From Amphiscolops sp. MND2022 (taxonomy: Eukaryota), in assembly GCA_964187785.1 (NCBI GenBank), contig OZ076411.1:37386001-37450000 (forward strand): a stretch of 64,000 nucleotides of DNA, in the 5' to 3' direction. Below the pieces are notes generated by a model. The model worked only from the letters and a program-made list of their open reading frames with translations. It was not told the origin of the DNA and ran no database searches. The first letter of the stretch is position 1. Each line of letters starts with the position of its first letter. The position numbers and the translations under genes were made by a program. Shown piece by piece: positions 1,125 through 40,591 of this stretch.

Positions 1125-4100
1125 CTGTCCTTTTTACGACTAATCCAGCAAGGGAACCAGACACTGGAACAACTTCTCTGGGATCCAGACCCGATCTACA
1201 GACCGAAGGATGGGGCTTCTCTGTACTATCGTCTTCATCGGGTTGGGGTAGCCCGGGTGACGGTGTAAGTATGCTTAATGCTATCCCCCTTAAACCACCC
1301 CCTTCAATCCAGTCTTTCCGCTGTTCCTAGATGTTCCAGATTTTGCAGCCAAGCGCACATTTTGACACCCCACCTGTTTGCCTTGGAGTGATCATCGATT
1401 ATAAAATAGCTAAAGTGACAAGGCCATTGTTGTCTGCAATCATAAATTTCTCAATGTCTGAGATAAAAACTCATTTCAAAAGGAGCATCTTTGCCTTGAG
1501 GGTGAACTACGTGAAATGAGCTTGTCAATCAGTTGACATCACGTTCGAGTTATTGAGTTGCGTTGAAAAATATTCACTTTTTTGTTATTTTCTTTCATAC
1601 TTTGTTGGTTTTTACCAAGTTTAGAAACACGATAGCTAACAATAGACACTGAAATTGGAAAACTTATCGTAGGAAAGGAACTATGTTTTCATGTATTGTG
1701 GAAGCTGATACTTTCGTACCCAAAATTTGATCATGTTTTCAATTTTTCCCTAAATTCTTGCATTTGAATGATGATGCTGCGGGTGTAAACTTGATCGTCT
1801 CTTCTCAATATTGGATAAACAGGAATCGCTGAAGTTGTGTCAAAATGCCAAATGCTGTGAAAAACATGAATGTATAATGTCAGACAGTCGATGCATCAAT
1901 GCTACGGAATTGTTCTTCTATATTGTCCATGTTCCAACCAACACTTGGCGTTCATTTTCTAATTTTGCATGCACTTGGCTGTTTTTTAAAGAAGCATCTT
2001 TCCAATTGGGCTGAAGTCAGAATCGAAATTCAGAATTATGTGACATCTGAAATTGATGATATTCAAATGGAGAATTCAGACTTGGGAATAAAGCTTCCAG
2101 TGGTGACAGAAGCAAAAAGGTGAATGCAAATTGATGCTCGGTTGCGGAATGGAGGAATGATTTGCATAATAACCTATTCGGGATTTAATGCCTGATTTGA
2201 CACTTCGTTAACTGAATTGAATATTTTAAGCCTTAGAGTCAATACTGCGCAACCGAGCCCATTTAGTAAGTCATCATTTAGCAGCCGACTCTGGAACAGG
2301 TACAGGACTAAAATGTACTTTCGAGGCATAACAAGAAGACTCTTTTTAATTTGAAACCAGCTATAAAAATTATGAAAGAATCTTCGACAATTTTTAAATT
2401 GATGCCTGAAAGTTATATCGAAATAATATAAACCCCAAGTTCATTCACTATTTCTGCAATTCAACTTCCTGAAATATTAATACTGTTGAGCAGTGCTTTC
2501 AAAATCTAAGTCATTTTCCTAAGTTGAAATCTGGGAAACGATAGAAGTGTTATTAGCAGCGTTCGCATACCGATAGTGCCCTAAATGAAAGAGCGAAGGG
2601 AAGTGGAGCGACGTGCCACTACAGGTCCAGCGCCTGGGAAAATGTAGGCCAAGTCATACAACCAATGTTTTAATTTCAATTTGTTCAGATTTCAACTTGG
2701 AGGTTCTAACACAGGATGTTTTGACATGTTTTCGGAATATTTAGTCTCGCTATTGCAGTCACTATTTGCTACCGCTGTTTCNNNNNNNNNNNNNNNNNNN
2801 NNNNNNNNNNNNNNNNNNNNNNNNNNNNNNNNNNNNNNNNNNNNNNNNNNNNNNNNNNNNNNNNNNNNNNNNNNNNNNNNNNNNNNNNNNNNNNNNNNNN
2901 NNNNNNNNNNNNNNNNNNNNNNNNNNNNNNNNNNNNNNNNNNNNNNNNNNNNNNNNNNNNNNNNNNNNNNNNNNNNNNNNNACAATATTCGGAAGCAGAG
3001 GTGAAACAGCGGTAGCAAATAGTGACTGCAATAGCGAGACTAAATATTCCGAAAACATGTCAAAACATCCTGTGTTAGAACCTCCAAGTTGAAATCTGAA
3101 CAAATTGAAATTAAAACATTGGTTGTATGACTTGGCCTACATTTTCCCAGGCGCTGGACCTGTAGTGGCACGTCGCTCCACTTCCCTTCGCTCTTTCATT
3201 TAGGGCACTATCGGTATGCGAACGCTGCTAATAACACTTCTATCGTTTCCCAGATTTCGACTTAGGAAAATGACTTAGATTTTGAAAGCACTGCTCAACA
3301 GTATTAATATTTCAGGAAGTTGAATTGCAGAAATAGTGAATGAACTTGGGGTTTATATTATTTCGATATAATTTTCAGGCATCAATTTAAAAATTGTCGA
3401 AGATTCTTTCATAATTTTTATAGCTGGTTTCAAATTAAAAAGAGTCTTCTTGTTATGCCTCGAAAGTACATTTTGCTCGAAAGTACTAAACAATGTTATC
3501 ATTTCCCACGTTGAATGTCAGCTGACATTCAACGTGGGAAATGATAACATTGTTTAGTGTAACCAGCATTTTCATCGGATACTTTATTCTTTATGGAAAC
3601 ATAATACATTTCAACTGAAGTTATCTAAATGGTATCTTTCAAGAGATGACTCAAGAAAATCAAAAATTCGAGTTATAAGAAGGCTTGATAGGCTACTCGA
3701 AATACCTAGAGTAAATCATATTTATCTCCTTGAAAACACTCAAAATCGAGGCAATGCCGCAGCACGATGCTGATAATGATATTATTTAATTGAAATTAAG
3801 GAGATAAAAATTTCATGAATATAGCTGACTGGTGTGAAACGAGGCTAAAATGTCTGTCTTATCTCAAACTCTTTCTCAATTGTTTTTTGGAACTTTTACA
3901 AAGCAAAGTCTATTGTTTATTTCATCCACCACTAATCATCAACTTCTCAACATTTCGTCATCAATGATTCTCAGAAGCTTGAAAAGTGGCTCATTGATTT
4001 TGTCAATATGTTCATTCAGTTGAACGCTCGTTATCTACTTAACGCTTATTTCAGTAAAATTTCAGTAAAAAGAAAGTATTGAAATCATGGAAAAGTGGAA

Positions 4101-7100
4101 TATAGGTGGGATTCTTAAACATCTTTTGCAATAGGATAATTGCAAATATTTGTAGTTATTTATTAAACACAATCTTTCGAAAACAATAAATAATAGTGTT
4201 TGTATGAATAAAGTAATTGGGATCAAATTTAGCTGTAGCGATAGGCGACAGGCAAATCAAGTTCAGCGGCCGCTAGGCGTCATTCGAATTTAAGGTCATA
4301 ACCGGGAACGGCATAATTCAGCGCCATATCTAAGGCTCAAAAATAGCAAAAGGACTTCAAAGTGTCAATTATTCTCTTTTACAGTACCCGAAGAACCCAA
4401 AAGTTGGACCGAATTGGCGCGCCGGGGCCCGCTGGAAGGGGACATTTTTGGGGTTTTTTAACATCCATTCTGTTGCAAAATATCAAAAAATTGAAGGGAC
4501 CCTTTGGAGGAAAAAAGGATTTCCAAAAAAAGTCTCACAATGTCAAAAAAATTGAAAGGGGACCCTTTAGTCTCGCCCGGTATTGTTTGTTACGTTGAAA
4601 AAGGAACAACTTTTATATTTCAGTTCTTTGTGCCAAATGGCCCAATTTGAAACCTAAAAGTTTCGTAAAACTATGTTGAACTATTCTGGTCAGTTCGTGT
4701 GGATTGAAAAAAAAGTCACAGTATAGTCGCGTTTCACTTCATGAAGCGCCGACTAAAAATTGCCTCAAAGAGTTCAAGACTTCAAGAATACTCTCGACCA
4801 GTGATGTTACAGTTTAAATTTTTTGAAACATTTCTCACAGTTTCAACAATATGAACGATAGTTTAAACTTACGAATAAAAAACTCAGGCTTTAAAATTTT
4901 ATCGAAATTACAATAAAATCAAGCGGTTCTTCATTGAATCACTCGGAATTCATCGAAAGCCTGTTACGTTTGTTTTCTGACAAGATGGTAGCTCGTGTAA
5001 AGTTTGTTCACAAACAACAGTTGAATGGAGAATGCCCAACAACAATTCATAAAGTTTTTGATAGGTTTCATTGGGTTTTTTGAAAAAGTCAAAGGCACAC
5101 TTGGGATTCTATGGATATGTGCTTGGATCAAGTTTGTAGATTCACCAGAAACATTCACAATTTTCTTGAAAACGTGGCATTCTCGCTGCATTTTGAAGAG
5201 CAATCAGTGATCAACTTTATAAAATAATTTTGTAAATTTCTTAAATAATTTTTGTAATTTCAAGCCGAACAAACTTTTCTATTAAAGTTTTAGATGCAGT
5301 TTATTACAATTTGACTTAAATCTGATTGTAATCATTTTTGAAACGTTAAACACCTCTCGAACTGTCAGATTTAAAATATAAAGTGTTAAAACTATTTGAT
5401 TGAACTCAGCCAACAATGAAGTTCGCAGTTTTTTCCTTCAACCGTACTTTCGAGAGAGCTTGACATTTTTGAATCTAAAATGTCTATGCTTCATCAGATT
5501 ATCTGATTGTACTGTATGATTTAATTCATGTTTTCACACCATTTTTTCGCGCCAATGCTGAACAACCGCAACCAACGGCTGTGTGAACAAGTCCTGAACA
5601 TAAGTTGGAGCACGACTAAAAATTGACTGATTGGTTGAATTGATTCAATTAGTGGGCTTAGCTGACAAATTAGATAACTAAATTATCACTAATACTTTTG
5701 TTAAGAAGAGCCACGTTCATACAATTTTTTTCGATGTGACCTAATACGCGGTATGGCCTTGTTAGACGCTGCGAAAAAATTTTTTAATGATGTAAATTTC
5801 GTAAGGCGCCCCCCGTTCGTGCTGAGTTATTTTCGGCTATGCTGTAAAATATCACCTGTTTGATAATTTCTAAGTTTATACTTTTATGGGTTAAACATTA
5901 ACTCTGATTAAAAGCAGAAGATGCTCTATAATCACGATTTACAGACCATTTAACCGAAATTACTTGTACCTTTGGTCTGTACAAAGCCGACGAAATTTAC
6001 TTGAAAACGGGCAGAAATTGTGCCGTATGGAAAACTGCGCATGAAAATTCCATGCCACTGAATCTATTTTTAGGTGAAAGGCGAAGAGCTGGATAAACTG
6101 GTTGGGTATTAGCGAATATCTTTGATGCTAATTTTTCCAGACAATGAAATAAAGAATGCTTTTCATCAGAATAGGTGTCATTATACTCATTGGGCGTTAC
6201 TTGAGAAATGCATTTTTCATTAGTTTCAAACGAAAGAGGCATTGAATTCGTTGAAGTAGGTGTTTTTGCTCGTACTTTAAAAAATTTGGCGGTAAAGTGG
6301 CTTCCATCTTGATTGATCCCATGGGAATTCATGTCAATCAGTAGCTTTGCGCGTTCCTACAACAAATTAGGGTATTTCCTCGGAGAGTGCGCTTAAAGCT
6401 AACAGAAAGCGAATTTGTAATTAAGTTATCTGCCTTGAAGCCTCTCTGCTAAATTCCTTTTTATCTTTCAGTGGGATTTCAAGCAGGCAAGCAATAATGC
6501 AGACTCAAAGTATCTCGTGTGCGACACCAAAGCTGCTGCTGGAACTAAGAACTGGCTCAAATCGCCCTTCATTGAGACACGCACTAGAGGAAAACCCATT
6601 TCCAAAATCGAAGTCAAAATTATGTAAGTCTTCTCGACTCAGCTTCAACTTTTCAGCTGATGATGTCATCACTTCAGCTAATCTCACCTCATCCTTACCT
6701 CCAAACCTCGGAATTAGAGCACAAGAATGCACCATCTTCCTTGATTGTACATTAATCTACTTGAATTGTGAAATCAAAAGGAATTTCATGTTGATTCCAA
6801 AGCTACCTTTGATACGCACATATCTCTTTTTATGAGAAAACTTGAAGAGGCGATATCCGAATTTCATGGAAAAATAACAATTTCCTCAATTCAGGCGGAT
6901 ATGCAAATTTTTGATAACGGTTAAGTGATTAGATGCACAAGCCGCATTTGACCTTTTAGCCCAGTTGACATTTGCTTAGTTCTCTGAGTACTTCGATGAA
7001 ATTGAAAAAAAAATTATAAGCTAAAATTCTTTTACGCAACATTGTTGAAAATGATAAGTGAAAAAAGTATATTAATTTCGTAGTTGAAAAGACGTTTTCA

Positions 7101-10100
7101 CACTTATAAGGTGTTTTTACCGCTGTCTGAAGCTATAAAATATTGACCAAAGGCTATAAGGCATAATAATCAGGCGGATTCCGAACTAATTTTTCAATTC
7201 GAGTGTTTTTTGACAGGTATGCTCAGGTACCGTGCACAGACATTCCGGGCAGCAACCCATTGTGCTCAAACGACCTTCGCTTGAAATACCTCGAAACGAG
7301 CAGTGGACGAGGAGATAGTCGCCAGTCCGACATTCTAACTTACAAAACAACCACAAAGAAACTTGCTGCCGAAACCTATCTGGACAACATCGAAGATGAG
7401 AACGAAAACAAAATCCAATGCTATTTTGATCATATCAACGTTGACTCTAGCTCCAAAGGGCTGTTCTTGGCAATTGAAGACTCGGGTTCATGCTCGGTGG
7501 TCCGCTCTATTGAACTCAGGTTCTCGGTGTGTCCCGAAACAAGGAGTAACCTCGTCGTTTTTCCCGAGACAGTTGTCGGAGATTCCGATCAGGAGGTGTA
7601 CGGCCTTTGTGCCGATGCATCATCACGTGACACCCCGCCCAGAGCAATGTGCCGTTATTTCGGGCAATGGGAGCTCCACGGAGGTCTTTCTAAGGAGTGT
7701 GAATGTGACCCTGGGTTCCAACCTAATTCCAGCATGTCCTCATGCCAGCGTTAGTTTTTTATGTGTTATATTAATATTCTCAGAAAGAATCGTGTCGTGT
7801 CAGATACGATGAAAAATTTTTCGGTGAGTGCTAAGAGTCTTGGAAGAAGTTGAGGTAGAAATTTAAAAAAATAAAAGGATCATTCATTTTTGATCAGAAA
7901 GTAGTTTCAAAGATTAGTTTTATGCATAGTTGATTGTCAGTTTTGAAAGTATAGTAGTCTTGCATTGCCGTAATCTTGTAACTATACGCTTGTTTCTCGT
8001 GTTTCAGCTTGTGATCGAGGCACTTACAAGTCGGTAAGAAGTAACGATGCCTGCAGTTCTTGTCCTGCAAATAGCGACACTTTCGGGTTCTCTCACGATG
8101 CATGTCAGTGCAAACCAGGCTACTTCCGTGGAATAAATGACTCAGTGGACTCACCCTGTGAAAAATCACCTCCACCTCCCAGGTATCCCATCGAAAACTA
8201 TTTTATAAAAATAACAAAGCAGCATCGTATTTAATGAGACCAAAGATCATTTGGGAACATCAATTAAATTGAGATGCAAGCGTTTAGAACAACTTTTCTA
8301 ACTGCTTCATTTTGCCATTTTCAGAGCCCTTAGCTACAATCTTGAAAACACAGTCATACACCTCAACTGGAAAGCACCTTCGTTTCCAACTGCGTACCAA
8401 CGAGTGCACGTGTGTTACCGCATCCACTGCCAGAGATGTCCAGAGTCAGTGGTGGCTAAGATCCCAGACTGTCTCTTCGACAACAGCTACACAATCTACG
8501 ACCTGGACCCAGAGACTAGTTACGTCATAGATGTGTATACCATGAACTCTATCACGATGAACCAGTTGGAAAGAGCCAACGCAGAGTCCATACAAGTCAC
8601 CACCGGAAAATTGGGTGAGAAAACTACAAAAGTTGCTGAAGAAAAATTTTTTTTAAGAATCGTTCATCTTTTTTTTCGTGAGAATTTTTAAAATTTACTT
8701 CAGAAAATTTTTCGAACATTGAACTCGCCTTTAATTTACACCGTCAGCTACTGCACTGTATCGGAAAATGCGTGCGATTTGAAAATTTTCAATGTGTAGT
8801 CTTTAACCATTGGTCCTAATACATGGCCGTTTATTTGAAAAAGTGGTCAATCATGTTAGAGCTTAACACGTCTTCAAGACTCTTAACAACAGTTGGTAAC
8901 ACTTAACTCGGTGGACTAAAGCTTGGAACCAATCAACAAATGTGACAACACTTAGCGAGATCAAGCTCCTCATCATAAGCACATTAATGTCATCTTGAGA
9001 TGATCTCACCAAACGTATTTGAACTTTCTCATTCAAAACTAGATACTTCAAACTAGGAGCCTGCAGATCCGCTCTGAAATTTACAATTTTTGATGAAGTT
9101 TTTCTCAGCGGGTTCTCTTTGTTTTTTGTTCTGCGAACTTATTATTTTTCGAATCACTGAGTTTAGACAAAGAAACGTGTCAAAATATACTCCATGTTTT
9201 TAACACCTAGAAAATAAAGAAAAGAAAATTATCGATTTTATTAGAAAAATTATCATGAAATTTTCATTTTACAAAATGTACAAAGAACCGTGGAAACGCT
9301 GGTGCAAAAGCATAATTGTAGCCTTTAGGAGCATTGAAACGGGAAAATGGACCCTTGTTTATGCGAATCTATGTAATCATTAACGATCGATGATTATTTT
9401 TCAAACACCTGTTCCTTTGTGGTAGGTTTCATAATTTTGCTTTCACTCCGTCTTTTGCTAAATGATTAAATGATATTTAATGGATTTTTTAAAGGGAAAA
9501 TCAAAAAGGTGTACCTTTGGCGTGAAACGCTTGAGACATGCATCTTATTCATGGAGTATCATCAAATTTTGAGCTGAAAAACAAAATCTGGTCACGAAGT
9601 GCAAAACACTTAGTTTTCTCCTAAGAGTGAACCATTTCTGGTGAAACTAATTCCATCTTTTCCCATCATAACCATCAGCATCAGGGCCTCTCGGTCAAGC
9701 GTTGACACTTAACCGCAGATTTATGATCAGCTATGTGGTTAAATTTAAACATGAGTTTCACGATAATTCTATAATTTGTTCAGACCATTTTTTCAAAAGC
9801 TGAAGTAGACCATCTCGTAAAAAAACATTTGAAACTAAACAGGTTCTCACTCATCATTGAAGACATCGGTATGCCTTAAGAGTTTTTTTCACATTTGGCT
9901 ATCTTTTAAGACCCAAAAAACATTACAGAAAAATGAAATTATTCGAATTATTGAAAAAAAACGACATACTCATCATGTTTTAGCATTTAACAGTGTCACT
10001 AAAAGCTAGGTTAGAATAAATACTTTTCTATCAAAATTGCTCTCATTCTTGACATTCTACTTGTTTACTCGCTGATGCGTTTTTTCTTCGTTTTTGGCTA

Positions 10101-13100: not shown

Positions 13101-16100
13101 CGCTATAAAAATTTGCGTTTTTATTTGGTGTAATTAACTTAGGCAGATGGGTACAGGAAATATGATGCGTGCAATGAAGGGTTCCCCTGTTTCGTGCTAA
13201 GATGGTCAGTGGTTTGTAAAGCATCAGGTTGCTTTGAGACTGGGCTTGAAGCTGATATTCTAATTACTTTCAAAGCCAAAATTAATCAACTGTGTATCAT
13301 TTCAGCGCGAGTGAAGGGGTTATCAGTTATGCGGACGAACCACAAGGGATTTCGATTGTCTTGGAAGTGCGATGCAATAAACAATCAACAGGGCCCCGAG
13401 GCTACAGGCGGGTCCCCCTCGACCCCACCTGAGACGCTGAAGCGGGCTAATCAATCGTCTGCAGGCAGCAGCTTGAAGCCTCTCTTCACCGGAGGAGATC
13501 AGCAACTGCAGCAGCCGCCGCCGCCGCCACTCAACAGCAACAACAAATTCCCCTCCAACAAAATTGTCTTCGAAATTAAGCTCATGTCTAAGGGACAACC
13601 CAGAATGCTCTACACCACGACTGCCACATCATTCGTCGTGCCAAGTACGCACCGCTTTTCCATATATGGTAATAAGGAGCAAGCTGGTTTCTATAAAAAG
13701 CGCCACTTGTGTCGTAAAACGCAAAGTTATATTGTTGCCCAACCCTGGAACAATACAGTTGCTTATACACAACCTCTCTCATGCATAAAAAGTGTTCAGA
13801 ATTTTTGGGCATAGTTCAAAAACGCAAGGTCATTATGATGAAATACTACCTTGATCTGATTTTCATGATAATACGTTTCTAGTGAACTCTTCTGTTGATA
13901 TATTTCTTAATCATGCTCTATAAAAGCTTTTTGTGACTGTTCCTTCAATCTTGTGAGGAACGTTGCGGATATTTAATTCATTGAGTGCGTTAATCAAGAT
14001 TCGATGAGTATAATTAGTCCTTATTATTTAAAAACGTCCGATAATGTATATATTGTTTACTTTTTCCACAGATGAAACGTCGGCGCTGGTATTCAGTCTA
14101 AAAGGATCCCATATGAAAGCATCTAAACAGGTGGATTTCAGACTCTTTCTTCTCAAATAAAAGCCGCTGATTTAATATTAATTTCAACAAATTTTTTGAA
14201 TTACTTTGATTTCTGATTTTTTGGCCGTCTCTTACGTCAACTTTAACATTGTTTTTCATCAACACTTGTCTTTACTTCAAGCAATCGTTAATTTGCGTAT
14301 GTTTTTCAAGCGTCTAACCTTCGTTTAGACTGGCGTACGTCTGGGGACACGAAAAAAGCATGCGGGTGTTTGTAAACATATGCCCCACCTAGGCGCCGTT
14401 TTCAATCTCTTGTCTTCTCAACAACGACAGGTGTCACTACCAAAGAATAGTTTCCATTGCTTGTTTGTCAATAATATTCTCTTCTTTAATTTAAAACGCT
14501 CAAAAAGCACAAATTGAGAATCAACAAAAAATAGTCTTCAAGATGACTTTGGCGCCCAAAATTCCCAAAAGCCGACTAATTTGAGATGCATGTTTGAGCA
14601 CCATCGAAAATCATGCGAACATAAAAGTTTTCATGCTTCGCAAGGTGACGCGGCAGACGTATCTTTGTTCGAAAAAAAAGGTATTGAGTAGCATTGTAAC
14701 TGCTTTAAAACTTCTCCGTTTTTAGACAGAAAAATCAACGCTGATTATTTTCAGGTTTGGAAGAAGGTTTCTGGAGTTTTCAAGTTTGCGTTGAAGGTGT
14801 CCGTGCCACGTGCAGCGAACAAATCACAACAGAAGTTTCGAGTAAGTGGTCCCCATTACTTTCTCTGTTCTTATTTTTACCTTTCTTCCATTGAAAACAG
14901 GGGATATTGCACCGTGGTGCGCAGCTGAACTTAGTTGAGAGAAAGGAATCGATTAATAAGAATACTTGCTTTTAACCGCCTTGCAGTTTCTGGGTATCAG
15001 TCAAGAGCACTCTGCAAGAACTGTTGCAGACAAATTAAAGACTTCGTTGGCTCTTAAAATTAAACACTTAGCCAACTTCCATATTTGGGGTTTCACGGTT
15101 CACCGTAAGCTCCCACTTCCTCATTTTTTGAAAAAGTCTCTTTCCATTGGTGATAAGGCTATAACCGGCCGCCTTTCATTGTTTTCCTGCAAGTTGAATT
15201 GAAAATTATTTCCCAAGGGAAGGAAATAGTACACTTTTATGATGTTATTTTTTGTCATATTATTGGTTTCGCTGTTTATATATTACAAATCAGGGTTTCA
15301 ATTGAACGCTTAGCTAATCAAAGAGCTCAGATGTTTGCATAATATGCAATAACCGAAAAAAGAACTATTCCAAGATTCAAGCATAACTAACCAACCCTGA
15401 TTCATATCTACTTCAATGTATAAAGATAACGTCAAGCAGGCTTAAATTGAAGTCTACCGGTCGACAAAAAGAAAATTTAGGGTTAAGTGAGGCTGAAATT
15501 TGACAAAATAACAACAAAGAATCTACACAAACACCGACAAAACCGGCACGTGTTCATTTTTGGTAATGGGAAAATTCGAATTTTTCGAACAATGAATCTC
15601 AGAGTTTTTTGAGTTATTTGAGTGATATAGCACATTCGAATTCACGCCGCGTTTGGTCTCTATATCCCTAAACTTTAGAAACCCAAAAGTTTTGAGACTT
15701 CTTGCTTCGGGAACCGAATTCTAAAGAAGTTTGTCCGTTTTTTCCAGGCAATGACTTGTATCAGTTAACATCTTTGGACTCCCGCCACTTCGCTGGGCTC
15801 ATTATCATAATCCTGACGATCATCGTGCTCATTGTGATCATTCTCATCCTCGCCATCTGGTGCATCAAACACAACATCAATGCCTCCAGGGGTCAAAAGG
15901 TCAAGTGGGCTCACCCTGCAGACCCTTACCACCAGTCGCCCTTCAACAACTTGGGGTACAAATCCTACAATACAAGTGAGTGTAATCTGGATTGTTTACA
16001 TAGCCTTTTCCCGCCAGCCAATCAGTCTATCAGTCTTAAACATAGGTTTCGATGGCGCGATTTATGAAATAAATAAAATTCAAGAGTCGAAAACTTTTTT

Positions 16101-19100
16101 AACTTGAAGAGTTCATACAGGTAATAGCAGGAATTCGTCTCAAACTTATTAGCACGTGTTTTAGTTGGTTGTGATCATCCAAAAAATCAAAGCTTAATTC
16201 CATTCAAGAATGGTTCAAAAGAAATATTTCGCGAATTTTTCTTTCTAAGAATTCGTCACCGGTGAAAACTTCTCAACTAACTGTCGTATAACAGAAAACA
16301 AAAAAAACAATAGAGTCAAAATATCAGACAGTCAAAATACCACTGATATTTTGTCCTCTGGTATTTTGTCCTGACGCCGTGAAACCAAACCACTCAGTGC
16401 GTGTAAATATGGAGTACCCATTTCAACCATTTTTAACCCCTGGAAATCTCCTCAATTTCACGGTTTTCTTTTCTTTTGACATTGCTCGTTCTTGACTAAC
16501 AAAAGATTTGGGATTCACTCCGCTACTTGTTATTGTGAAACCAAAATTGTTCTTGCAGTAATGAACAATGCTGGTATGTTTTTCACATTGACGTACTTTC
16601 TCCGTGTTGATCTAGGGTATTGTTCATTGTTCTGAGCGATGAAAACAATTATAAACAATACAATACATCTACTGTATGTTTCAGCTTATGCCATGCCTGC
16701 AACATTCTACACCGAGCAGAGGGGGTGGGGGGCAAGAGGAGGCTTGACTGATTACCCTGCGCAGATGCTGGAAGAATGGGAAGTTCAACAAATCCCATTG
16801 AACAGAATTGAATGGCTCAAAAATGACACACATTGTAGGTTTTTCATTTTTTTTCTCACAAACCCCCTCCCCATGTCTTGAATAATTAAACTGCACAACA
16901 ATTAAATAACTCTAAATTATCAGAGATAGACGTTAAGATTTTTTCAACTTCGGGTGTCACACAAAAAATGAGTAAATAAACAAGCTTTAATTTGTTTTTG
17001 CACGCAGTTTCTTTGGAAATAATGAACTTTGTCTTTAAATATTCATAATTTTTGCTCCATGGGAGTAAACTGTCTGTCCATAAGCATGTTGCTGTAGCCA
17101 CCCCAGACTAAGATATTACAAGATTCATTTAATTTATACAACTTATATTTGTACTTTTATGCAACCTCTAGAGGCCACTTTGTTAAAATTTCACTAACTT
17201 TTCAGACATTCAGTCTACAGACTTAATTGCCTCGAAACCTTTTAACTAAATCGAAATTTAATCTGCATCTTTTGGACTCCTCTTTGTAATTCCACTCGAA
17301 AAAAATGGGCTGCAAAATTGCAAGAAGACAATAAAAAAATTTTGAATTTTTATCTGCCTCGGAGCTGCAAACTTGGCTGTCTCGTGGAATTTTTGTGAAA
17401 ACATGAAGTCGAAAAAAAACGCATTCGAAACTTCACAGAATCATGAAAAAATTCTCCGCATATTAGATTAGGTTAAAAATGGTTCCAATTCCATTCCCGA
17501 TTTTCCTCCAAATTTCTGATGATTTTGAACCTATATCAAAGTGAATAAAATTTCAGGTGGAAAGTGTAAATTGCAACTTCTTAGACTCTTTGAAAAATAT
17601 CTCATCTGCCTATACCTGTGTGAACAAAAAATGACAGTGTGTCGTTGCATTAGTGATCCACAAGTGCTCTCGTCAGAGCTCACCTGTCGGGGTATAAGGC
17701 GCTCTAATACTGTGGTCAATCATTTTTCCATTTGGGGTATTGATTTTGGGCATCTCTCTAGACAGGTGTGCAACCTGGTTGCGTGGGGTCTTTTTTCACA
17801 CGCCCGAGATTTCTGATTAAGTGACAGAATGGGCTACAGCGGGGACAGCGGAGCCTGTCAATTCTGGGGGTGATCAATAATGGGGAAATTATATGCAGCA
17901 CTACTTCTCCATTGTTTATTATAATTTTTATCACTCCTCGTCTTTGCCTTTCAATGACAAAATAAGTCCGCTTAGCTACAAACAATAATACGTCGCGTGA
18001 TTGACAAGTGTTTCGTAAATATACACCTGAAAAGCCACCAAGATGGGAATTATTGTAACATTGAATTTCAAACATATGGAAAAGGAAAAGGGAGGTATGA
18101 ACAGTGGATGATTACACGCTTTTGTGTGTTTGTTCACGCAGCCAAGTCTAAGCTTATTTTGTCCATCATTTGTGTTTTTGTTCAGTTTTTGCGCAAACAG
18201 CATTTAAAAGTAAAAACTACTATAAGCTGGGTATAAACTGGTACTACTTTCGGATCCCAAATTCAGAGCGGAAAAATAACAGTCACCCAATATGTATTAT
18301 ATAACACCTGTACAACTGCATACATCGCCTATCCTGAAATGATTAATTTTCAAAAAGTGAGGTCTTTCATGCGCTTTTGTTTGTAAAACCAAACAATCGT
18401 AGATGAAAGTCTTTCCAATTACTTTTTTCTATTTGACACATTTGTTGATAAAAGAGTTCGGCGAAGCGATTCTGGTTGTGATGTATTATAAAAATTGTTT
18501 TTAAAAACAAGAAAACCTTTTTCTCGTTTTCCGTTTGAGCGAATCCTCATCCCTATCTTTGAAGCGACTGCTAACTTTTTATTGTCAATTTACGACTCAA
18601 GATCACTTTAGATACTCCGAGGCGTGTAATATGCTTCTAGTGTTCTCTACATTTCAAACGATGCAACTGCCTTTGACACTAGACAGCACAATTATTAAAG
18701 TGCACAACTTACTTGAGTGGGAAAAGTACTAAACAAAAATTGAGGTTCAAGAATTTAACTGACAGGCCTTTAACCGGGCAAGTTTCTTTATTGAACTTTT
18801 TAAAATAAGGCTGAAATTGGGTTAAGGTGATTTTTTTAACGCGGAACTAATTTCTTAAAATCTATTGAATTTAAACTCTATGTCGACCTATGAGCAAGTT
18901 TTATGTCTTAATGTCGGCATTCATTAGGGATTCAATTCATTAATTCACATTCGATTGAGTTGGTTTTTTAAGTGATTGGTTGAAAATCAATCTCGCATGA
19001 ATAACGATAGCTTCCTAATTGCTGTCATTCGTCACATACATTTAGTGTTTAACCAAATGTTACATGTTAGAGGAATAATACATGCAACCATTGATTCCCA

Positions 19101-22100
19101 ACTCATATAAATATCTAGAATCATTAATTTATTCATTCAAAATATGACAACTTGTAACTCGAATTATACAGGTTTCAAAAAATCACTATTGAATTCTGCT
19201 CCAAAAATATCAATATGTTGCATCAGTAATGCAGCATTACTTGGGGTATTTTTGTAAGCTTGTGTTTCCTGTAACCCTGTAAGTGGAAGTTTATTTTTCG
19301 AATCATCTGAAGAACTGAAAGGGTCACATTATGTTTAGCCAGTCCGAATGGTCTCCCTGACTTGTGTCCCGCACTGCTGAACGACCACATCTTCAACCAG
19401 TCATGTTTGATTCTGGTCAAAACTGCCGTTCCCAATAACTACCCCGACCTCGGAGTGGTGGCACACGAAGTGTCCACTTGCGCCCAGTTCCAACATCCCA
19501 ACGTCATATTCCTCTACGGCATTGCCCTCAGGGGTTGGTATGCCTAATGATGACGTCATTGATAGTCAAATACTGTACATTCGAGTAGAAAAATAGAAAA
19601 AATCGGTTTTTAGAATCAAAAATTGCATTTTTGAAATTTAGAATGGAAGAACATTTTTAAAATTGATAAAGTCATTGTTCATTTGCTTGAATAACGTTTC
19701 TTTGGGCGTATCATATCCAAAAAAGTCATGAGTAACTTGTATTTCTCTGCAATATAAAAACACGTAGTTTTGATTCGTTTTCAAATGAAAAACAATCTCC
19801 TGGTGTTAATATAATTCAAAACACTTCAGCGGCAAGACCAGAATGAAACTCCGTGGTAAAGTCATACAAATTGAGATGAAAGACTTTTGAACTTTGTATT
19901 TTTTTCTTACCATAACAAAGCAGAGGCGCCGACGCTGTCCTCTTGACTTGGGCAGGTGCGGACTAGAGCAGTTAACTAGAGCAGTGCGGACTATAGAGCA
20001 AATTTGCTCTTCTAGCGTCGAGGTGCAAACTTCTTTTCAAGTCGGATGCTGCGCGGCTTTGCTTTATTGGACAGCTCGGAGGTAGTTGAATGCAAGCGTT
20101 TTATTATTTATAGGTCCGGAAATGCTGATTTGTTTGGAATACACAGCCAAAGGTACGCTGGAAAGTGTCATTGCTCAGATGTGCTTGACTGGAGTGCAGA
20201 ACCGATACATAAAGGTGGCTCACCTCTTAAGGGGAATCGCCAGTGGCATGCAGTTCTTCTCAGATCTCGGATACGTGCACAAAGTACGTGAAATCATGCA
20301 GTTTTATGCCTCGAATGCTCTTGACGAGCTCTTTGAAAATCTTGAACTCTGTATTCGGTATTTCGGAAAACTTTAGAACTATCAAAGTTTCATCATTCGA
20401 ATGATCAACTATGAACAATTCAAGAATGAAATTATTTAACTGGCTCCAAAAGACATGCTAGTGGATTTCATTTTCAGCCATTTCGAACCCAGTATTGAAA
20501 AACGAATAGTAATTAGTTCAAACTTTGTTAAAATATGGATTTTTTCAATTTCTCTAATGAAATTGGCGCTTTTACTTTCTGAAAATGAAGCAAACTTCTC
20601 CAAACGAACAACAAGAGGAAGGGAAAACTATGGAAGTATTCACAATTTAAGTAATCTGTTGCTTTTTACAGGTGCTAAATGCAGAAAATGTGTACGTGAC
20701 GGAAGGCGATGTTTGCAAAATAGCTGGATTCGACACCAGAGCCGCCCTAGAAGCGGAAGAAGTAGAAAACAAAACCAGTGTGGTGAGTTTTATCCATCTT
20801 CCTCAAAACCTAAATTTATTTAAGGAAACACCTCCGAGACAAAAACGTATTTACCAGCTTTGTTCGATAACAACTCGAAAACTCGCTTTAAAAACCAAAA
20901 TCAGCACTGAACGGACTTGAATGAAAAATGGATCAAGCTCAATTCGAATAAAACCTTTTCAATTGTTTGGATATTAGAAGAACTTTCGAAAAAGTCTTCC
21001 CAACTTTTTGATGTTTGTTAATTGTGACAGTGAAGTTCTTGGGCATCCAAACAATATTCCGTTTCTTGTTTCAATGATTTCATGACATCATTTGTGAAAG
21101 CGCTCCACTTTAATATCAAGTATTTAGAAAATTTGGAGTTCGTCTATTCACGGATCTAAAGTATTTATTTACTTCAACTGGTGTCACTGCAGAAAGTTGG
21201 AAAGTTAGAGGTGATTTTTTGTTAGCAGTCTTCCTATTATTAGCGTTTCACCAAGTTCTCAATTCACGTTCCCCCGGTCATGTGGTTATTAGATAATAAA
21301 CGGTTCCCCCGGTCATGTGGTTATTAGATAATAAACGGTTTTTGACAGCAAATACTTTGAAGAACTTTTCAATAGAAGAGTGACAGCTTTTCATAATTGA
21401 GTTTATCTTGATCTAGAGTTTGAACCTCTATCTCTCTTCTTAACGTGAAATTATGTTGAGGAATTTCAAACGGATGCTTTCATCTTTTTATCATTATTCC
21501 CTCCCGCTATTAATCTTCTTTCAACGGTTCTCTCCCTTTTCTTAGGGACGAAAAACACTGCGAAAGAATTTTCTTTGTGCAATCGTCGCCATTGTTTTGA
21601 CTTAATTATTCACATTTTTCATCATATTTGCAAAGTACAAAGCACCATAAGTGCCGCATTTTTGCATCTTTCGACCATCTGCAATTGTTGCATAGCCGAG
21701 GCGTGAAAAAATTGGGACACCTGAACAAAATTAATGAACTGCATAAATATTCAACAATTCATTATCATGGAAATGCTAAACCACAAACGATAAATGATGG
21801 CCCGTAATTTTTGTCAATAGTTTCTGTTTTCTCTCCATTTCCCGTCTTGGCAGAGGAAAGAGTTTGTAGATAGCCACTAATTGCATTGTATTTGCACATA
21901 TCGAAAGTTCTCAGAAACAAATTATCTCCTGGAAGCGTTTTAATTGTGTGGCTACAGTACAATATTCAGGCGACGTTTGTTACAGTCACTTCCACATTTC
22001 AAATCATGTAAAAAATTGCTGAATTTTTCAAAAAATTATGCCAAGCTGCGATGTAGTCCAGATACTATTACATATCTAGCATGCCAGATCAATTGTAATG

Positions 22101-23945
22101 TGTATAACGGTTGTGCTAATTCAGCATTAGGCATAACAAGCCGGGAACGGCACGAGCCAGCGCCACTCCTAAGGCTCAAAAAGCGCAAAGTACGTCAAAT
22201 AGTTGAGAAACTTTTTTGAGAAAGCTCGCAAAATCTCAGAGTGCCGAAAATATTCCAAGGGAGACCCCTTTAGGCTTAAAAAGACTTTTCTATCTGAAAA
22301 TATTTAAAAACCAAAGCGAGAACCCTCATGTTGAAGAAAAAGACTTTCAAAAAAGTTGCACAGTGCCGAAAAACCCACATACAACTTTGAAATTCGAATA
22401 AAAATGAATGGGGCCCTCTGAACGCCGTTGGTCTTCTTTTGATATTAGGCTCATTATATAACTTGTTTTGGCCACTTCGAGCGGGTTGAAAAAAAAAGAA
22501 AAACCCTTCGAAAACCCACTTTATTAGTCGCGTTTCATTTCATGAAGAGTCGAAGAAATTCTTTTCAGACACCAAAATAAGAACAGTCTTTTCCTAAACA
22601 AGAGAGAGAGAGAGAGAGAGCAACACCCTGAAAGAAACTTAGATGCATCTGAACAGATCCGGATTAACCTCCATGAAAGAATAATAACCTCAGAATGTTT
22701 GAAATAATTTCGATATTTTTTGCAGATCTTTGATGCCCTGGTACCATGGCTGTCTCCGGAAGTGTGTGCTGGGTATGGCAACGTGGGGGCAAGACAATAT
22801 TCGCTCCTGTCTGACATCTGGTCTTTTGGGGTCCTCATGTGGGAATGCATCTCGGGAGAACGTCCTTTCTGGAATTGGACCCAGCAAGACGTGAGTAGTC
22901 CTCATACGGATATTCCCTAACCAATGCCATGGGAGCTTTCCTTTTCCACCATGAATATGTGGAAACTTTTAAACTGGATTGTGGAAATTTTGAAATGGAT
23001 TAATATTATATTATTTGAGGTGGTGTTTCAACTGATTTGAATAAATCAAGATATTCTGTTCGGTCCAGATTATCCGGTCAGTGACCTCTGGCTACCAGCT
23101 GCCGACCCCCAAAGACTGCCCCCAGAGTCTGAACCTAATCATGGCTACATGTGTGAATGGGGACCCCTCTCAGAGACAGTTCTTCGACAAGATCCTCACC
23201 AACCTCGAGAAGTTTATCAGCAATCCCACCAAGATGGAAGAGGCAGCCCTGAACTCTTCGTTCTTCAACCTCTATTCTTCGTAATTACTTCTAACGTAAC
23301 CACACTTGCTGTTTACAGCTGTATGGAAGCATTTGCTGACTCTTTAGCGTCGTTTTTATTCGGTGGTTTCGAACTAATGGAAAAAACGTTAACATAAACA
23401 ATTTGTGGTTTTTCAAGACTTCAATACCTCAAGTTTCTAACCGAATAGTAACAGGTTCAACAAAATAGCATTTTTGACATTTTTTAAATCAATTTTGGTG
23501 CTCATCTTACAAATTGTGCCATCAAGAGTCCGTAAATGTTCTTTCACGGCTGTATTTTAAACCAGACTTAGTTTTGGTATAAATTGATCTTTTTTGTAGG
23601 CTCGGTGAATGCAACTCCACAAAAGCCATGCTACCCGAAGGCAGATCCATGTTTACCACCAACACATCGGTGCAAGAGTGGCTGCAACATATAAAACTAG
23701 ACCATTGTGCACCCATGCTTCTGAAGGAGAACCGGAACTACCTGACGATAGGTGACGTTATGAGTATCGATTCCAAAACTCTCAAGTCCATGGGCATCAG
23801 TTCACAAGACCGGAAAGTGATGCTGAAAAGTCTGGAATCGATAGCTTTGGCTAGTGCCAGCGATGGGAACTTCCAAGCAGAAGGAAACAAAAACAATAAT
23901 GACAGCATTGTTGGGCTAACCAGTATAGCTCATAGCATTATTTAA
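1125..23945 (+). CDS. Eph: Eph-family receptor tyrosine kinase-like protein, predicted pseudokinase (15 exons in window, about 1096 aa; 5' signal-peptide exon not in window)
   Basis: GT-AG exons joined with consistent phases: 1125-1264, 6472-6623, 7217-7749, 8008-8182, 8325-8614, 13306-13644, 14755-14841, 15748-15975, 16685-16834, 19339-19533, 20114-20283, 20672-20782, 22726-22890, 23069-23280, 23600-23945 (stop). Motifs: LBD (W..YLVCD..KNWLKSPFI..KIEVK; KGLFLAIEDSGSC..CPET.SNLVVFPET), sushi/EGF (CECDPGF; CDRGTYK..CSSCPANS..CQCKPGYFR..PC), FN3 (LNWKAP..YRIHC..DLDPETSYVIDV), TM (FAGLIIIILTIIVLIVIILILAIWCI), kinase fold (QFQHPNVIFLYG; LRGIASGM; SDIWSFGVLMWE; GERPFW; GYQLPTPKDCP), SAM (SVQEWLQHIKL), C-terminus -HSII. 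Confidence 0.93.
2310..3474. repeat. 472-bp inverted repeat arms (2310-2781 and 3003-3474) flanking a 200-N assembly gap
   Basis: 3003-3474 is the reverse complement of 2310-2781, with two mismatches seen by eye. N run at 2782-2981. Confidence 0.9.
2782..2981. other. Assembly gap (200 N)
   Basis: Run of N in the sequence. Confidence 1.
3485..3558. repeat. Perfect 74-bp spacerless palindrome
   Basis: actaaacaatgttatcatttcccacgttgaatgtcag|ctgacattcaacgtgggaaatgataacattgtttagt; the two 37-nt arms are exact reverse complements. Confidence 0.95.
4298..4620 (-). mobile_element. Interspersed repeat family A copy (putative Helentron/DINE-1-like non-autonomous element), terminal motif eroded
   Basis: ccgggaacggcataattcagcgccatatctaaggctcaaaa..ggacttcaaagtgtc is shared with the copies at 22136, 26656 and, reverse-complemented, those ending at 26016 and 37153. 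Internal ggacccttt repeats. Confidence 0.65.
21269..21340. repeat. Perfect 35-bp tandem duplication in an Eph intron
   Basis: ttcccccggtcatgtggttattagataataaacgg x2. Confidence 0.95.
22136..22420 (-). mobile_element. Interspersed repeat family A copy
   Basis: ta|acaagccgggaacggcacgagccagcgccactcctaaggctcaaaa terminus. Inner boundary approximate. Confidence 0.65.
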
Positions 23946-39677: not shown

Positions 39678-40591
39678 AGTCATGTCATACTGGGGATATC
39701 TGGCGTCGGTAACCCGACTGCTGCAGCCGACCGGGATGACTGGCAATACCCAATTGACACTGGAGGATGCCGCATACTGGGGAACGTGACCGTTTGCAGC
39801 TTATGGAACTACTGGAAGCCACATTTGCGGGAAAAGAGAAGGCCCACAGACACAACTGACTTTAGCGCGAGCAGTCCCTTGTTCCTTTGCGTGAAGAACT
39901 TACAGAACTGATGGACCAGGTGGGCCGGTGTCCAGTCAGCCGCGAAGTGGAGCGAACTATTTCTCAAATTGGATTTGCCGCAAACATTGGACTACACCAG
40001 CTACCTTTGGAAGTGGGTGGTATGGTTGTCCGAGAGACCGTGGTCCGAGCAAAAAGGGCGCAGAACCGCTCTCTCTTATGATGGCTGGTATTCCACAATG
40101 CGCGAGGGCAGGATGAAGGACAATCCGCTGCATTAGTCATGTCATACTGGGGATATCTGGCGTCGGTAACCCGACTGCTGCAGCCGACCGGGATGACTGG
40201 CAATACCCAATTGACACTGGAGGATGCCGCATACTGGGGAACGTGACCGTTTGCAGCTTATGGAACTACTGGAAGCCACATTTGCGGGAAAAGAGAAGGC
40301 CCACAGACACAACTGACTTTAGCGCGAGCAGTCCCTTGTTCCTTTGCGTGAAGAACTTACAGAACTGATGGACCAGGTGGGCCGGTGTCCAGTCAGCCGC
40401 GAAGTGGAGCGAACTATTTCTCAAATTGGATTTGCCGCAAACATTGGACTACACCAGCTACCTTTGGAAGTGGGTGGTATGGTTGTCCGAGAGACCGTGG
40501 TCCGAGCAAAAAGGGCGCAGAACCGCTCTCTCTTATGATGGCTGGTATTCCACAATGCGCGAGGGCAGGATGAAGGACAATCCGCTGCATT
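39678..40591. repeat. Tandem duplication, 2 x 457 bp
   Basis: Units 39678-40134 and 40135-40591. Identical ORFs at 39887/40344 and 39928/40385. Confidence 0.95.

What the first reader, a model, noticed from the sequence alone, without database searches (positions are those of the whole stretch)
16685..23280. Eph receptor with an intact architecture but a dead kinase: an invertebrate-type Eph pseudokinase
Seen in sequence: the Gly-rich loop reads NDTHSSPNGLPDLC (canonical IGxGEFGEVC); the catalytic loop reads YVHKVLNAENV (canonical YVHRDLAARNI, so the catalytic Asp and both Arg are lost); the Mg-binding DFG reads GFD; the activation segment has no Tyr. The beta3 Lys (ILVK), the alphaC Glu (AHE), WLSPE and SDIWSFG are kept, and all exons are stop-free, which argues for a selected pseudokinase rather than a pseudogene. 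Established: the recognised kinase-dead Ephs are vertebrate EphA10 and EphB6. Inference: this is an independent loss of catalysis, converging even on D-to-G at DFG as in EphA10, with signalling through scaffolding or a kinase-active partner.
Basis: partly seen in the sequence, partly recalled or inferred. Interest (0 to 1): 0.8.

Follow-up and report, generated by a model that had tools for sequence, protein, structure and literature searches.

The report
Acoel Eph receptor with dead kinase
This is an intact, strongly conserved gene for an Eph-type cell-contact receptor whose kinase domain has lost its catalytic residues, and it is one of at least a dozen such "dead-kinase" Eph genes in what appears to be an acoel worm genome, a loss that arose independently of the two known vertebrate cases.

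Summary
Exons at 16685-23280 encode an Eph-like kinase domain with these motifs:
- Gly-rich loop NDTHSSPNGLPDLC
- catalytic loop YVHK|VLNAEN
- GFD in place of DFG
- no activation-loop Tyr
- beta3 Lys and alphaC Glu kept

The gene is larger than reported. It has 15 AG/GT-bounded exons (1127-23945, + strand) giving a 1096-aa open frame: ephrin-binding domain, Cys-rich region, FN3, TM, pseudokinase, SAM. The signal-peptide exon is not in the window.

A colinear ortholog in a related species keeps every exon, every splice site and every dead motif. dN/dS is about 0.05-0.07 overall and 0.02 in the kinase domain, with dS of 1 or more. This is a selected pseudokinase, not a pseudogene.

New here: it is not a one-off.
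- Ten other loci read in this genome share HK|VL...N and/or K[IV]xGF[DE], wherever those exons could be read.
- The family signature occurs 12 times, against 2 in the reversed control.
- RefSeq "ephrin receptor-like" proteins of the acoels Symsagittifera roscoffensis and Convolutriloba macropyga share the motifs.

The loss therefore predates a family radiation. An ectodomain tree shows it is independent of vertebrate EphA10, which converged on HK and G-F.

I found no canonical active Eph, no clear ephrin and no RNA data; these points stay open. The scan flagged two other dead Ephs on other pieces of this genome.

The parts
1127..1264 (+). Exon X1: start of the mature ectodomain (VLFTT...GWG...), N-terminal edge of the ephrin-binding domain. 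The true exon starts 2 nt earlier, at 1125, in a split codon. The signal-peptide exon lies upstream, outside the window.
   Evidence: Acceptor tttcag and donor gtaagt; in frame with the next exon. Ortholog exon is 12 nt longer with the same splice sites. No signal-peptide exon found in 1-1124.
6472..6623 (+). Exon X2: ephrin-binding domain, first conserved Cys (YLVCD...NWL...IEVKI).
   Evidence: Weak tblastn hits to Ciona Eph residues 58-94. Splice sites and phase fit. Ortholog exon has the same length.
7217..7749 (+). Exon A: rest of the ephrin-binding domain plus the start of the Cys-rich domain.
   Evidence: Pfam Ephrin_lbd (28.2 bits, cut-off 27) and Ephrin_CRD (28 bits, cut-off 27). 403 library hits, the named ones being Eph receptors.
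8008..8182 (+). Exon B: Cys-rich / Ephrin_rec_like region.
   Evidence: Pfam PF07699, 23.7 bits against cut-off 23.1; tblastn to seven Ephs.
8325..8614 (+). Exon C: first fibronectin type III domain.
   Evidence: Pfam fn3, 31 bits.
13306..13644 (+). Exon D: first part of a divergent second FN3, with a fast-evolving low-complexity insert of about 55 residues.
   Evidence: No Pfam hit. The insert has dN/dS 0.6 and in-frame indels. Similar only to S. roscoffensis P0187 at the same position.
14755..14841 (+). Exon D2: end of the second FN3 (FWSFQVCVEG...).
   Evidence: 85% nucleotide identity to the ortholog; splice sites and phase fit.
15748..15975 (+). Exon E: transmembrane helix (15789-15866) and start of the juxtamembrane region.
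   Evidence: 26-residue hydrophobic run; 82% nucleotide identity to the ortholog.
16685..16834 (+). Exon F: juxtamembrane region with conserved Tyr in FYTE (16705-16716) and DYPAQ (16750-16764), and the first half of the degenerate Gly-rich loop.
   Evidence: Both tyrosines are kept in the ortholog.
19339..19533 (+). Exon G: N-lobe, with the rest of the dead Gly-rich loop, beta3 Lys (19419-19421) and alphaC Glu (19467-19469).
   Evidence: 98.8% amino-acid identity to the ortholog across the N-lobe (end of exon F plus exon G), dN/dS about 0.01. The alphaC-beta4 stretch aligns only to Eph kinases.
20114..20283 (+). Exon H: hinge to the catalytic loop, ending ...LGYVHK (Arg to Lys; the intron follows directly).
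   Evidence: Best PDB hits are EphA3/A5/A7. The same exon end is seen in all paralogs where it could be read.
20672..20782 (+). Exon I: VLNAEN (catalytic Asp replaced by Val, Asn kept), KIAGFD (the DFG Asp is Gly, with an acid two residues later) and an acidic, Tyr-free activation segment.
   Evidence: Identical in the ortholog except one Val/Ile. The family signature has 12 genomic matches against 2 in the control.
22726..22890 (+). Exon J: WLSPE, SDIWSFG, start of the C-lobe.
   Evidence: Pfam PK_Tyr_Ser-Thr, 39 bits; best PDB hits are EphA8/A5/B2.
23069..23280 (+). Exon K: end of the C-lobe (subdomain XI Arg kept) and linker.
   Evidence: Pfam PK_Tyr_Ser-Thr, 32 bits, profile positions 212-258 of 258.
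23600..23945 (+). Exon L: SAM domain (23670-23843), C-terminal ...AHSII and the TAA stop.
   Evidence: Pfam SAM_2 30.8 bits and SAM_1 28.5 bits. The tail is identical in the ortholog.

Best explanation
This is a functional, protein-coding Eph-family receptor whose tyrosine-kinase domain has become a pseudokinase. It belongs to an old, expanded clade of such receptors, found so far only in acoel worms. All members where these parts could be read share Arg-Asp to Lys-Val in the catalytic loop, with an intron right after HK. They also share DFG to GF(D/E), with an acidic, tyrosine-free activation segment.

Shown:
- intact Eph architecture
- loss of both catalytic aspartates and of the Gly-rich loop
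- very strong purifying selection, strongest on the dead kinase domain
- family-wide sharing of the lesions
- independence from vertebrate EphA10

Inferred:
- The ectodomain still mediates cell-contact recognition. It keeps the conserved Cys pattern and has dN/dS of about 0.08-0.1.
- The intracellular part works as a non-catalytic scaffold. The kinase fold is held in one conformation: His and Phe of the regulatory spine, beta3 Lys, alphaC Glu and the catalytic-loop Asn are all kept.
- This scaffold presents conserved juxtamembrane tyrosines, the SAM domain and a hydrophobic C-terminal tail to adaptors.
- Any phosphorylation is supplied in trans by other tyrosine kinases.
For: Architecture: Pfam Ephrin_lbd, Ephrin_CRD, Ephrin_rec_like, fn3, PK_Tyr_Ser-Thr and SAM on successive exons; Eph kinases are the best solved-structure matches.

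Gene model: 15 exons, all AG/GT, one 1096-aa frame.

Selection: the ortholog on ENA contig ERZ26859043:ctg80909 has all exons, the same splice sites and indels of +12, -3, +6 and -6 nt. Amino-acid identity is 86.5% overall and 95% in the kinase domain. dN/dS is 0.053-0.069 overall and 0.023-0.025 in the kinase domain, with dS of 1.0-1.5.

No alternative exon: no HRD- or DFG-bearing exon lies in the introns of either species.

Family: the same lesions appear at 10 other loci read here. The signature K[IV]xGF[DE]xRxxL[DE] has 12 matches against 2 in the control. The same motifs occur in S. roscoffensis XP_063712362.1 and XP_063722550.1 and in a C. macropyga protein.

Phylogeny: the acoel clade has 100/100 support and sits inside Eph with 98/99. 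The ectodomain tree separates it from vertebrate EphA10.

Canonical tyrosine kinases exist elsewhere in the genome, with 16 exact HRDLAARN sites, so trans-phosphorylation is possible.
Against: - There is no transcript evidence: no RNA run is indexed for this organism.
- The start codon and signal peptide were not found in the window.
- The second FN3 is not recognised by Pfam.
- Catalytic inactivity is inferred from sequence alone. The beta3 Lys, alphaC Glu, catalytic-loop Asn and a conserved acid at GF(D/E) could support nucleotide binding or an atypical mechanism.
- No ephrin ligand was detected above threshold.
- The scaffold partners are conjecture.
Confidence: 0.85

Rival explanations
1. 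It is an atypical but active kinase. The conserved acid two residues after the usual DFG position (GFD/GFE) binds the metal, and another residue acts as the base, as in kinases once wrongly called dead.
For: The beta3 Lys, alphaC Glu and catalytic-loop Asn are kept, and the acid in GF[DE] is conserved across the family. The domain is the most constrained part of the protein.
Against: No family member has an acidic residue at or near the HRD Asp position. Residues there vary: VLNAEN, VLRARN, VLCASN, VLFSGN, VLCCKN. The Gly-rich loop has a single Gly and two Pro. P0187 appears, by my reading of its sequence and not by the automatic alignment, to have Arg at the beta3 position. There is no activation-loop Tyr.
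Confidence: 0.08
2. It is a decaying or unexpressed gene copy (pseudogene) that only looks intact.
For: There is no RNA evidence. The 5' exon was not found. The ectodomain is very divergent, at most 32% identity to Ephs outside the clade.
Against: At dS of 1.0-1.5 the ortholog keeps 15 open exons and all splice sites, has only in-frame indels, and gives dN/dS of 0.05, or 0.02 in the kinase domain. By contrast, a conserved intronic block carries 1-2 nt indels and stops.
Confidence: 0.03
3. The dead motifs come from a wrong exon choice, and the real mRNA uses other exons with HRD and DFG.
For: The HK|VL junction (20283/20672) sits exactly at the catalytic Asp and has no cDNA support.
Against: tblastn with seven active Ephs finds no other kinase exon in the window. 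A motif scan of all + frames of the gene region finds no HRD- or DFG-type segment in either species. The same junction and motifs recur in the ortholog, in the paralogs where it could be read, and in independent RefSeq models.
Confidence: 0.02

Closest known systems
Vertebrate EphA10 (receptor tyrosine pseudokinase)
   Same: Full Eph architecture. The catalytic loop reads HK with the Asp lost (skate EphA10: YVHKMLAAHK), and the DFG Asp is replaced by Gly (skate GFR; human GFG, PMC8454701). The rest of the domain is conserved and thought to act as a scaffold.
   Different: EphA10 has also lost the beta3 Lys (PMC8454701). It is a single gene that arose within jawed vertebrates (PMC6993872) and its ectodomain groups with vertebrate EphA. 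The acoel gene keeps Lys and Glu, has a wrecked Gly-rich loop, carries an acid at +2 (GFD), and belongs to a family of at least 11-13 loci. The resemblance is convergent.
Mammalian EphB6
   Same: A kinase-dead Eph that still signals, with juxtamembrane tyrosines phosphorylated by other kinases (PMC8347583, PMC8454701).
   Different: Its lesions differ (DFG to RLG, beta3 Lys lost). It is inactive only in mammals (PMC6993872) and works alongside active EphB partners. No active Eph partner was found here.
RefSeq 'ephrin type-A receptor 4-like/5-like' of Symsagittifera roscoffensis (XP_063712362.1, XP_063722550.1) and 'ephrin type-B receptor 1-B-like' of Convolutriloba macropyga
   Same: Same clade (100/100) with the same HKVL...N and GF[DE]xR lesions, JM-pseudokinase-SAM layout and hydrophobic C-terminus. 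P0191 and P0228 are orthologs of the neighbouring paralog at C3:37.06-37.10 Mb.
   Different: They are paralogs of this gene, 37-39% identical in the kinase domain. They are automatic annotations; in the papers I could search, nobody has noted that they are pseudokinases.
Canonical invertebrate Ephs (Ciona Ephs, nematode VAB-1)
   Same: Domain order, Cys pattern of the ligand-binding domain, Eph-type C-lobe, SAM. From my own knowledge, VAB-1 has kinase-independent functions.
   Different: They all have GxGEFGEV, VAIK, HRDLAARN, DFG and an activation-loop Tyr. This gene is about 30% identical to them in the kinase domain.

Membership tests
Eph receptor family | N-terminal ephrin-binding (Ephrin_lbd) domain | tested here: met
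   PF01404 scores 28.2 bits (cut-off 27) on exon A, covering profile positions 73-176. The N-terminal part lies on exons X1/X2, with weak tblastn hits and the conserved YxVC and NWL motifs. Divergent: at most 32% identity to other Ephs.
Eph receptor family | Cys-rich region (Ephrin_CRD plus Ephrin_rec_like) | tested here: met
   PF25599 scores 28 bits against cut-off 27; PF07699 scores 23.7 bits against cut-off 23.1.
Eph receptor family | Two fibronectin type III domains | tested here: inconclusive
   The first FN3 is met (PF00041, 31 bits). The second has the right position and WSFQV-type strand motifs but no Pfam hit and a 55-residue insert. It is similar only to acoel P0187.
Eph receptor family | Single transmembrane helix followed by a juxtamembrane region with two tyrosines | tested here: met
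   There is a 26-residue hydrophobic run. Tyr in FYTE and DYPAQ is conserved in the ortholog. Their equivalence to the canonical JX1/JX2 tyrosines is inferred.
Eph receptor family | Eph-type tyrosine-kinase-fold domain | tested here: met
   For three kinase exons the best PDB matches are all Ephs. The clade sits inside Eph with 98/99 support against Abl, InsR and a sponge TK.
Eph receptor family | C-terminal SAM domain and PDZ-binding tail | tested here: met
   SAM_2 scores 30.8 bits and SAM_1 28.5 bits. The tail ...AHSII is hydrophobic and identical in the ortholog. PDZ binding itself was not tested.
Eph receptor family | Binds ephrin ligands | not testable with these tools
   No ephrin was found at E<=0.001. 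Nine loci give about 18-bit hits to the N-terminal half of PF00812.
Pseudokinase (sequence definition: lacks at least one of beta3 Lys, HRD Asp, DFG Asp) | HRD Asp absent | tested here: met
   YVHK|VLNAEN has Val at the Asp position. It is the same in the ortholog and across the family.
Pseudokinase (sequence definition: lacks at least one of beta3 Lys, HRD Asp, DFG Asp) | DFG Asp absent | tested here: met
   KIAGFD has Gly at the Asp position.
Pseudokinase (sequence definition: lacks at least one of beta3 Lys, HRD Asp, DFG Asp) | No phosphotransfer activity | not testable with these tools
   Needs a biochemical assay.
Vertebrate EphA10 orthology group | Groups with vertebrate class-A Ephs in phylogeny | tested here: not met
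   In the ectodomain tree, EphA10 groups with vertebrate EphA (99/99) and the acoel clade is separate (100/99). The kinase-domain attraction (95/94) weakens to 88/84 once the motif columns are removed.

The most novel reading that the evidence does not exclude
In acoels the whole Eph family may have gone catalytically dead. On this reading the genome has a dozen or more Eph-type receptors, all pseudokinases, and no kinase-active Eph, so Eph 'forward signalling' in a whole bilaterian lineage would run without intrinsic kinase activity.

All 11 loci that could be read carry the lesions where those exons are visible. No Eph ectodomain locus lies near a canonical HRDLAARN site, and GxGEFGEV is absent from the genome. 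The one structurally different candidate (C11:23.27-23.29 Mb) fails every canonical-motif test, but its sequence could not be read.
Probability: 0.35. Interest if true: 0.8.

Novelty: new variant of a known kind. Interest (0 to 1): 0.6.

Why it matters
Eph pseudokinases are currently known as two vertebrate genes. The main evolutionary survey (PMC6993872) did not sample Xenacoelomorpha. It states that kinase-dead Ephs trace back to jawed vertebrates and that all three catalytic motifs are present in every phylum.

This finding adds an independent, much more expanded dead-Eph clade in an early-branching bilaterian group. Its dead domain is under stronger constraint than the rest of the protein. 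It has also converged on the same two substitutions as EphA10 (HR to HK, D to G).

That makes it a natural replicate for asking what an Eph kinase fold does when it cannot catalyse. If no active Eph exists in acoels, it would also show that kinase-independent Eph signalling can carry the whole system.

Tried and rejected
- **Tunicate origin.** The best named ligand-binding-domain hits were Ciona Ephs. I rejected this because the mitochondrial contig has tRNAs on both strands and no tRNA-Gly(UCU), and the orthologs of a neighbouring paralog are acoel proteins.
- **Mollusc or nudibranch origin.** I guessed this from the size of the mitochondrial genome and dropped it for the same reason.
- **G000 being S. 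roscoffensis or C. macropyga.** Rejected: the C3a ortholog is only 38-82% identical per exon.
- **Word-indexed protein searches**. These gave almost nothing, partly because some full-length acoel proteins sit in clusters represented by short exon fragments. I could not list the family in the annotated acoel proteomes.
- **RNA evidence.** No RNA run is listed for this organism.
- **Reading the remaining Eph-like loci** (C11:23.27 Mb, C2:30.37 Mb, C6:16.90 Mb). I ran only motif-presence patterns and did not try to recover those sequences by other means.
- **Ephrin Pfam search.** Nothing above threshold. Exon splitting and divergence make this uninformative.
- **Signal-peptide exon.** Not found in 1-1124, nor in 3.2 kb upstream in the ortholog.
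- **Rfam on 1-26000.** No hits.


Full report
**Observation.** The + strand of the window carries stop-free segments that Pfam recognises, in order, as Ephrin_lbd plus Ephrin_CRD (7170-7751), Ephrin_rec_like (7974-8231), fn3 (8302-8688), PK_Tyr_Ser-Thr (20086-20373, 22708-22917, 23045-23281) and SAM (23583-23942). The kinase pieces find Eph kinases, and little else, at the top of the solved-structure list.

Joining the pieces at canonical AG/GT sites gives 15 exons and one open frame of 1096 residues ending in TAA at 23945.
- NDTH|SSPNGLPDLC across the 16834/19339 junction
- LILVK
- AHE
- YVHK|VLNAENV across the 20283/20672 junction
- GFD
- a Tyr-free, acidic activation segment
- WLSPE
- SDIWSFG

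The finding's coordinates cover only exons F to K. The gene starts at or before 1127, and the signal-peptide exon is not in the window.

**Is it a real, selected gene?** The ligand-binding exon has one close relative in the 1.8-billion-protein library. It is a 192-residue ORF, 79% identical, on a 100-kb contig of an ENA assembly. Walking along that contig recovered a colinear locus.

All 15 exons are there, with AG/GT at the same positions. Length differences are +12, -3, +6 and -6 nt, or zero, and the frame is open throughout. The dead motifs are identical.

- Synonymous divergence is about 1.0-1.5.
- dN/dS is 0.053 (NG86) to 0.069 (ML) for the whole protein.
- dN/dS is 0.023-0.025 for the kinase domain, which is 95% identical at the protein level. 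The N-lobe stretch carrying the ruined Gly-rich loop is 98.8% identical.
- Only the low-complexity insert in the second FN3 looks relaxed, at 0.6.

A conserved intronic block (21462-21902) has 1-2 nt indels and stops, as non-coding DNA should. No alternative HRD- or DFG-type exon exists in the gene region of either species. A pseudogene and a mis-joined model are therefore both very unlikely.

**It is one of a family.** The window's genome (1.07 Gb) has other Ephrin_lbd exons.

Wherever the relevant exons were visible, the loci show the same lesions and the same gene structure. An exon ends ...G(Y/F)xHK. The next begins VL....N and carries K(I/V)xGF(D/E)xR..LE.EE. Examples are VLRARN...KIAGFDHR, VLIAEN...KVAGFDMR, VLFSGN...KISGFDMR and VLCCKN...KITGFDQR.

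A back-translated signature, K[IV]xGF[DE]xRxxL[DE], matches 12 places in the genome against 2 for the reversed control. One further member has His in place of the Arg. Two earlier notes of this scan (s1-151931, s1-152066) had flagged dead Ephs on other pieces of this genome. I cannot say which loci they are.

**Whose genome?**
- The mitochondrial contig is 14,704 bp, reads TGA as Trp and fits the invertebrate code.
- It has about 22 tRNAs on both strands, so the host is a bilaterian and not a tunicate.
- Two short library hits turned out to share 90% clusters with RefSeq proteins of the acoel Symsagittifera roscoffensis (XP_063712362.1, XP_063722550.1).
- A search from one of them found a Convolutriloba macropyga protein.
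- XP_063722550.1 and the Convolutriloba protein are orthologs (38-82% identity per exon) of the paralog that lies about 290 kb upstream of this gene on the opposite strand.

The host is therefore an acoel, or a very close relative, but neither of those two species. All three named proteins read ...HKVL(I/C)(S/A)(E/S)N... and ...KI(A/G)GF(D/E)MR.... The lesions are therefore at least as old as the common ancestor of these acoels and older than the duplications within the family.

**Relation to the known dead Ephs.** In a kinase-domain tree the acoel sequences form one clade (100/100) on a long branch inside the Eph family. That family has 98/99 support against Abl, insulin receptor and a sponge TK.

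Skate EphA10 attaches to the acoel clade with 95/94 support, falling to 88/84 when the catalytic-loop and DFG columns are removed. An ectodomain tree shares none of those columns. It puts EphA10 with vertebrate EphA (99/99) and the acoel clade apart (100/99). The attraction is convergence.

The alignment shows how close that convergence is: EphA10 reads YVHK-M and GFR where the acoel family reads YVHK-V and GFD. The family differs from EphA10 and EphB6, which have lost the beta3 Lys (PMC8454701). This gene keeps Lys and the alphaC Glu, though by my reading of its sequence S. roscoffensis P0187 seems to have Arg there.

**Active partner and ligand.** I looked for a canonical Eph kinase in the genome.
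- HRDLAARN is encoded exactly at 16 places, none within megabases of an Eph ectodomain exon.
- The neighbouring DFG contexts at several of those sites look like other TK families (my reading).
- GxGEFGEV is encoded nowhere.
- No kinase exon exceeds 56% identity to a Ciona Eph over a full-length match.
- One locus differs in structure. C11 has a ligand-binding/Cys-rich exon at 23,269,485. About 24.5 kb downstream it has a kinase exon that runs uninterrupted from alphaE to the DFG position, 52% identical to Ciona.
- That locus matches none of HRDLAARN, [YF][VI]HRDLxxRN, CK[VI]xDFG or the GF[DE] signature. I could not read it.
- A site encoding HKDLAARN lies on the opposite strand next to the C4:82.24 Mb member.

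Whether any acoel Eph is catalytic stays open. The Pfam ephrin model gives nothing at E<=0.001, and nine loci give about 18 bits to its N-terminal half. With exon splitting and fast evolution, this says little.

**How it probably works.** Shown: the receptor has a complete, constrained ectodomain, one TM helix, and a kinase fold lacking both aspartates and the Gly-rich loop. It also has conserved juxtamembrane tyrosines, a SAM domain and a conserved hydrophobic tail.

Inferred from what is established for EphA10, EphB6 and other pseudokinases (PMC8454701, PMC8347583): it binds a ligand on a neighbouring cell and clusters. It then signals without catalysis, with the rigidly conserved pseudokinase domain acting as a docking or allosteric module.

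Several features argue for a folded, probably active-like conformation rather than a loose remnant. The His of HRD, the Phe of DFG, the Lys-Glu pair and the catalytic-loop Asn are retained, and the activation segment is fixed and acidic. Tyrosine phosphorylation, if it occurs, must come from other kinases, which the genome has. Reverse signalling into the ligand-bearing cell needs no kinase at all.

I put about 0.85 on "selected, catalytically inactive Eph receptor". I put much less on any particular partner.

**Novelty.** Eph pseudokinases are a known kind. The main survey of Eph evolution sampled no xenacoelomorph. It states that kinase-dead Ephs trace to Gnathostomata and that all phyla keep the three motifs, with only a passing remark about altered invertebrate isoforms.

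Full-text searches for acoel or Xenacoelomorpha together with Eph or ephrin found nothing on this. Relatives are in RefSeq, but only under automatic names. I rate it a new variant of a known kind: an independent, expanded, family-wide loss with a distinct motif set.

**Limits.**
- No transcript data and no 5' exon.
- Inactivity is inferred from sequence alone.
- The paralog sequences used in the trees are HSP composites with a few intron-derived residues at their edges.
- Taxon sampling in the trees is thin.
- The family census relies on motif and exon hits, not on full gene models.

Noticed in passing
window 6135-6471: The 336 nt directly upstream of exon X2 are 85.7% identical to the ortholog, reaching 88-98% in the last 190 nt. 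That equals the exon itself and is well above other alignable intron blocks (66-75%), although dS is 1 or more. It has single-base indels and no open frame, and Rfam finds nothing. It may be a conserved intronic regulatory or splicing element.
   Followed up: partly
window 44737-51068 (+), composition skew over about 44-58 kb: An LTR-retrotransposon-like pair of ORFs. One is a 512-aa gag-like ORF (DUF1759). The other is a 1585-aa pol with RVT_1, RNase H, integrase zinc-binding and core domains. The surrounding 14 kb has strong GC and AT skew. Two further ORFs of about 455 aa on the minus strand (52952-56045) have no Pfam hit.
   Followed up: partly
window 39678-40591: A perfect two-copy tandem repeat of a 457-bp unit (100% match), a few kb upstream of the retroelement.
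   Followed up: no
window 2782-2981: A 200-N assembly gap inside the 5.2-kb intron between exons X1 and X2. It was left as is.
   Followed up: no
G000 C4:82231891-82231914 (+), next to the family member at C4:82.237-82.242 Mb (-): A site encoding HKDLAARN, with Lys for Arg but the catalytic Asp kept, on the opposite strand beside a dead family member. It could be an intermediate or a different kinase. It could not be read.
   Followed up: no
G000 C11:23269485-23270141 and C11:23294040-23294183 (+): An Eph-like ligand-binding/Cys-rich exon and, about 24.5 kb downstream, a kinase exon with no intron at the HK position. It is 52% identical to Ciona Eph through the DFG position, yet fails both the canonical and the family motif patterns. 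It is the best candidate for a different kind of Eph in this genome.
   Followed up: partly
G000, many contigs (e.g. C2:51949895, C1107:235368, C9:965022, C813:688350, C12:30228932): Many apparently intronless tyrosine-kinase ORFs of 500-1000 aa, several sharing the identical catalytic-loop DNA (HRDIAARN). This looks like a recently amplified, possibly retroposed or element-borne TK family.
   Followed up: no
G000 C1929 (14,704 bp; L009 + L010): The mitochondrial contig has TGA as Trp, AGR best read as Ser in COX1, about 22 tRNAs on both strands, and an unusually divergent COX1.
   Followed up: partly
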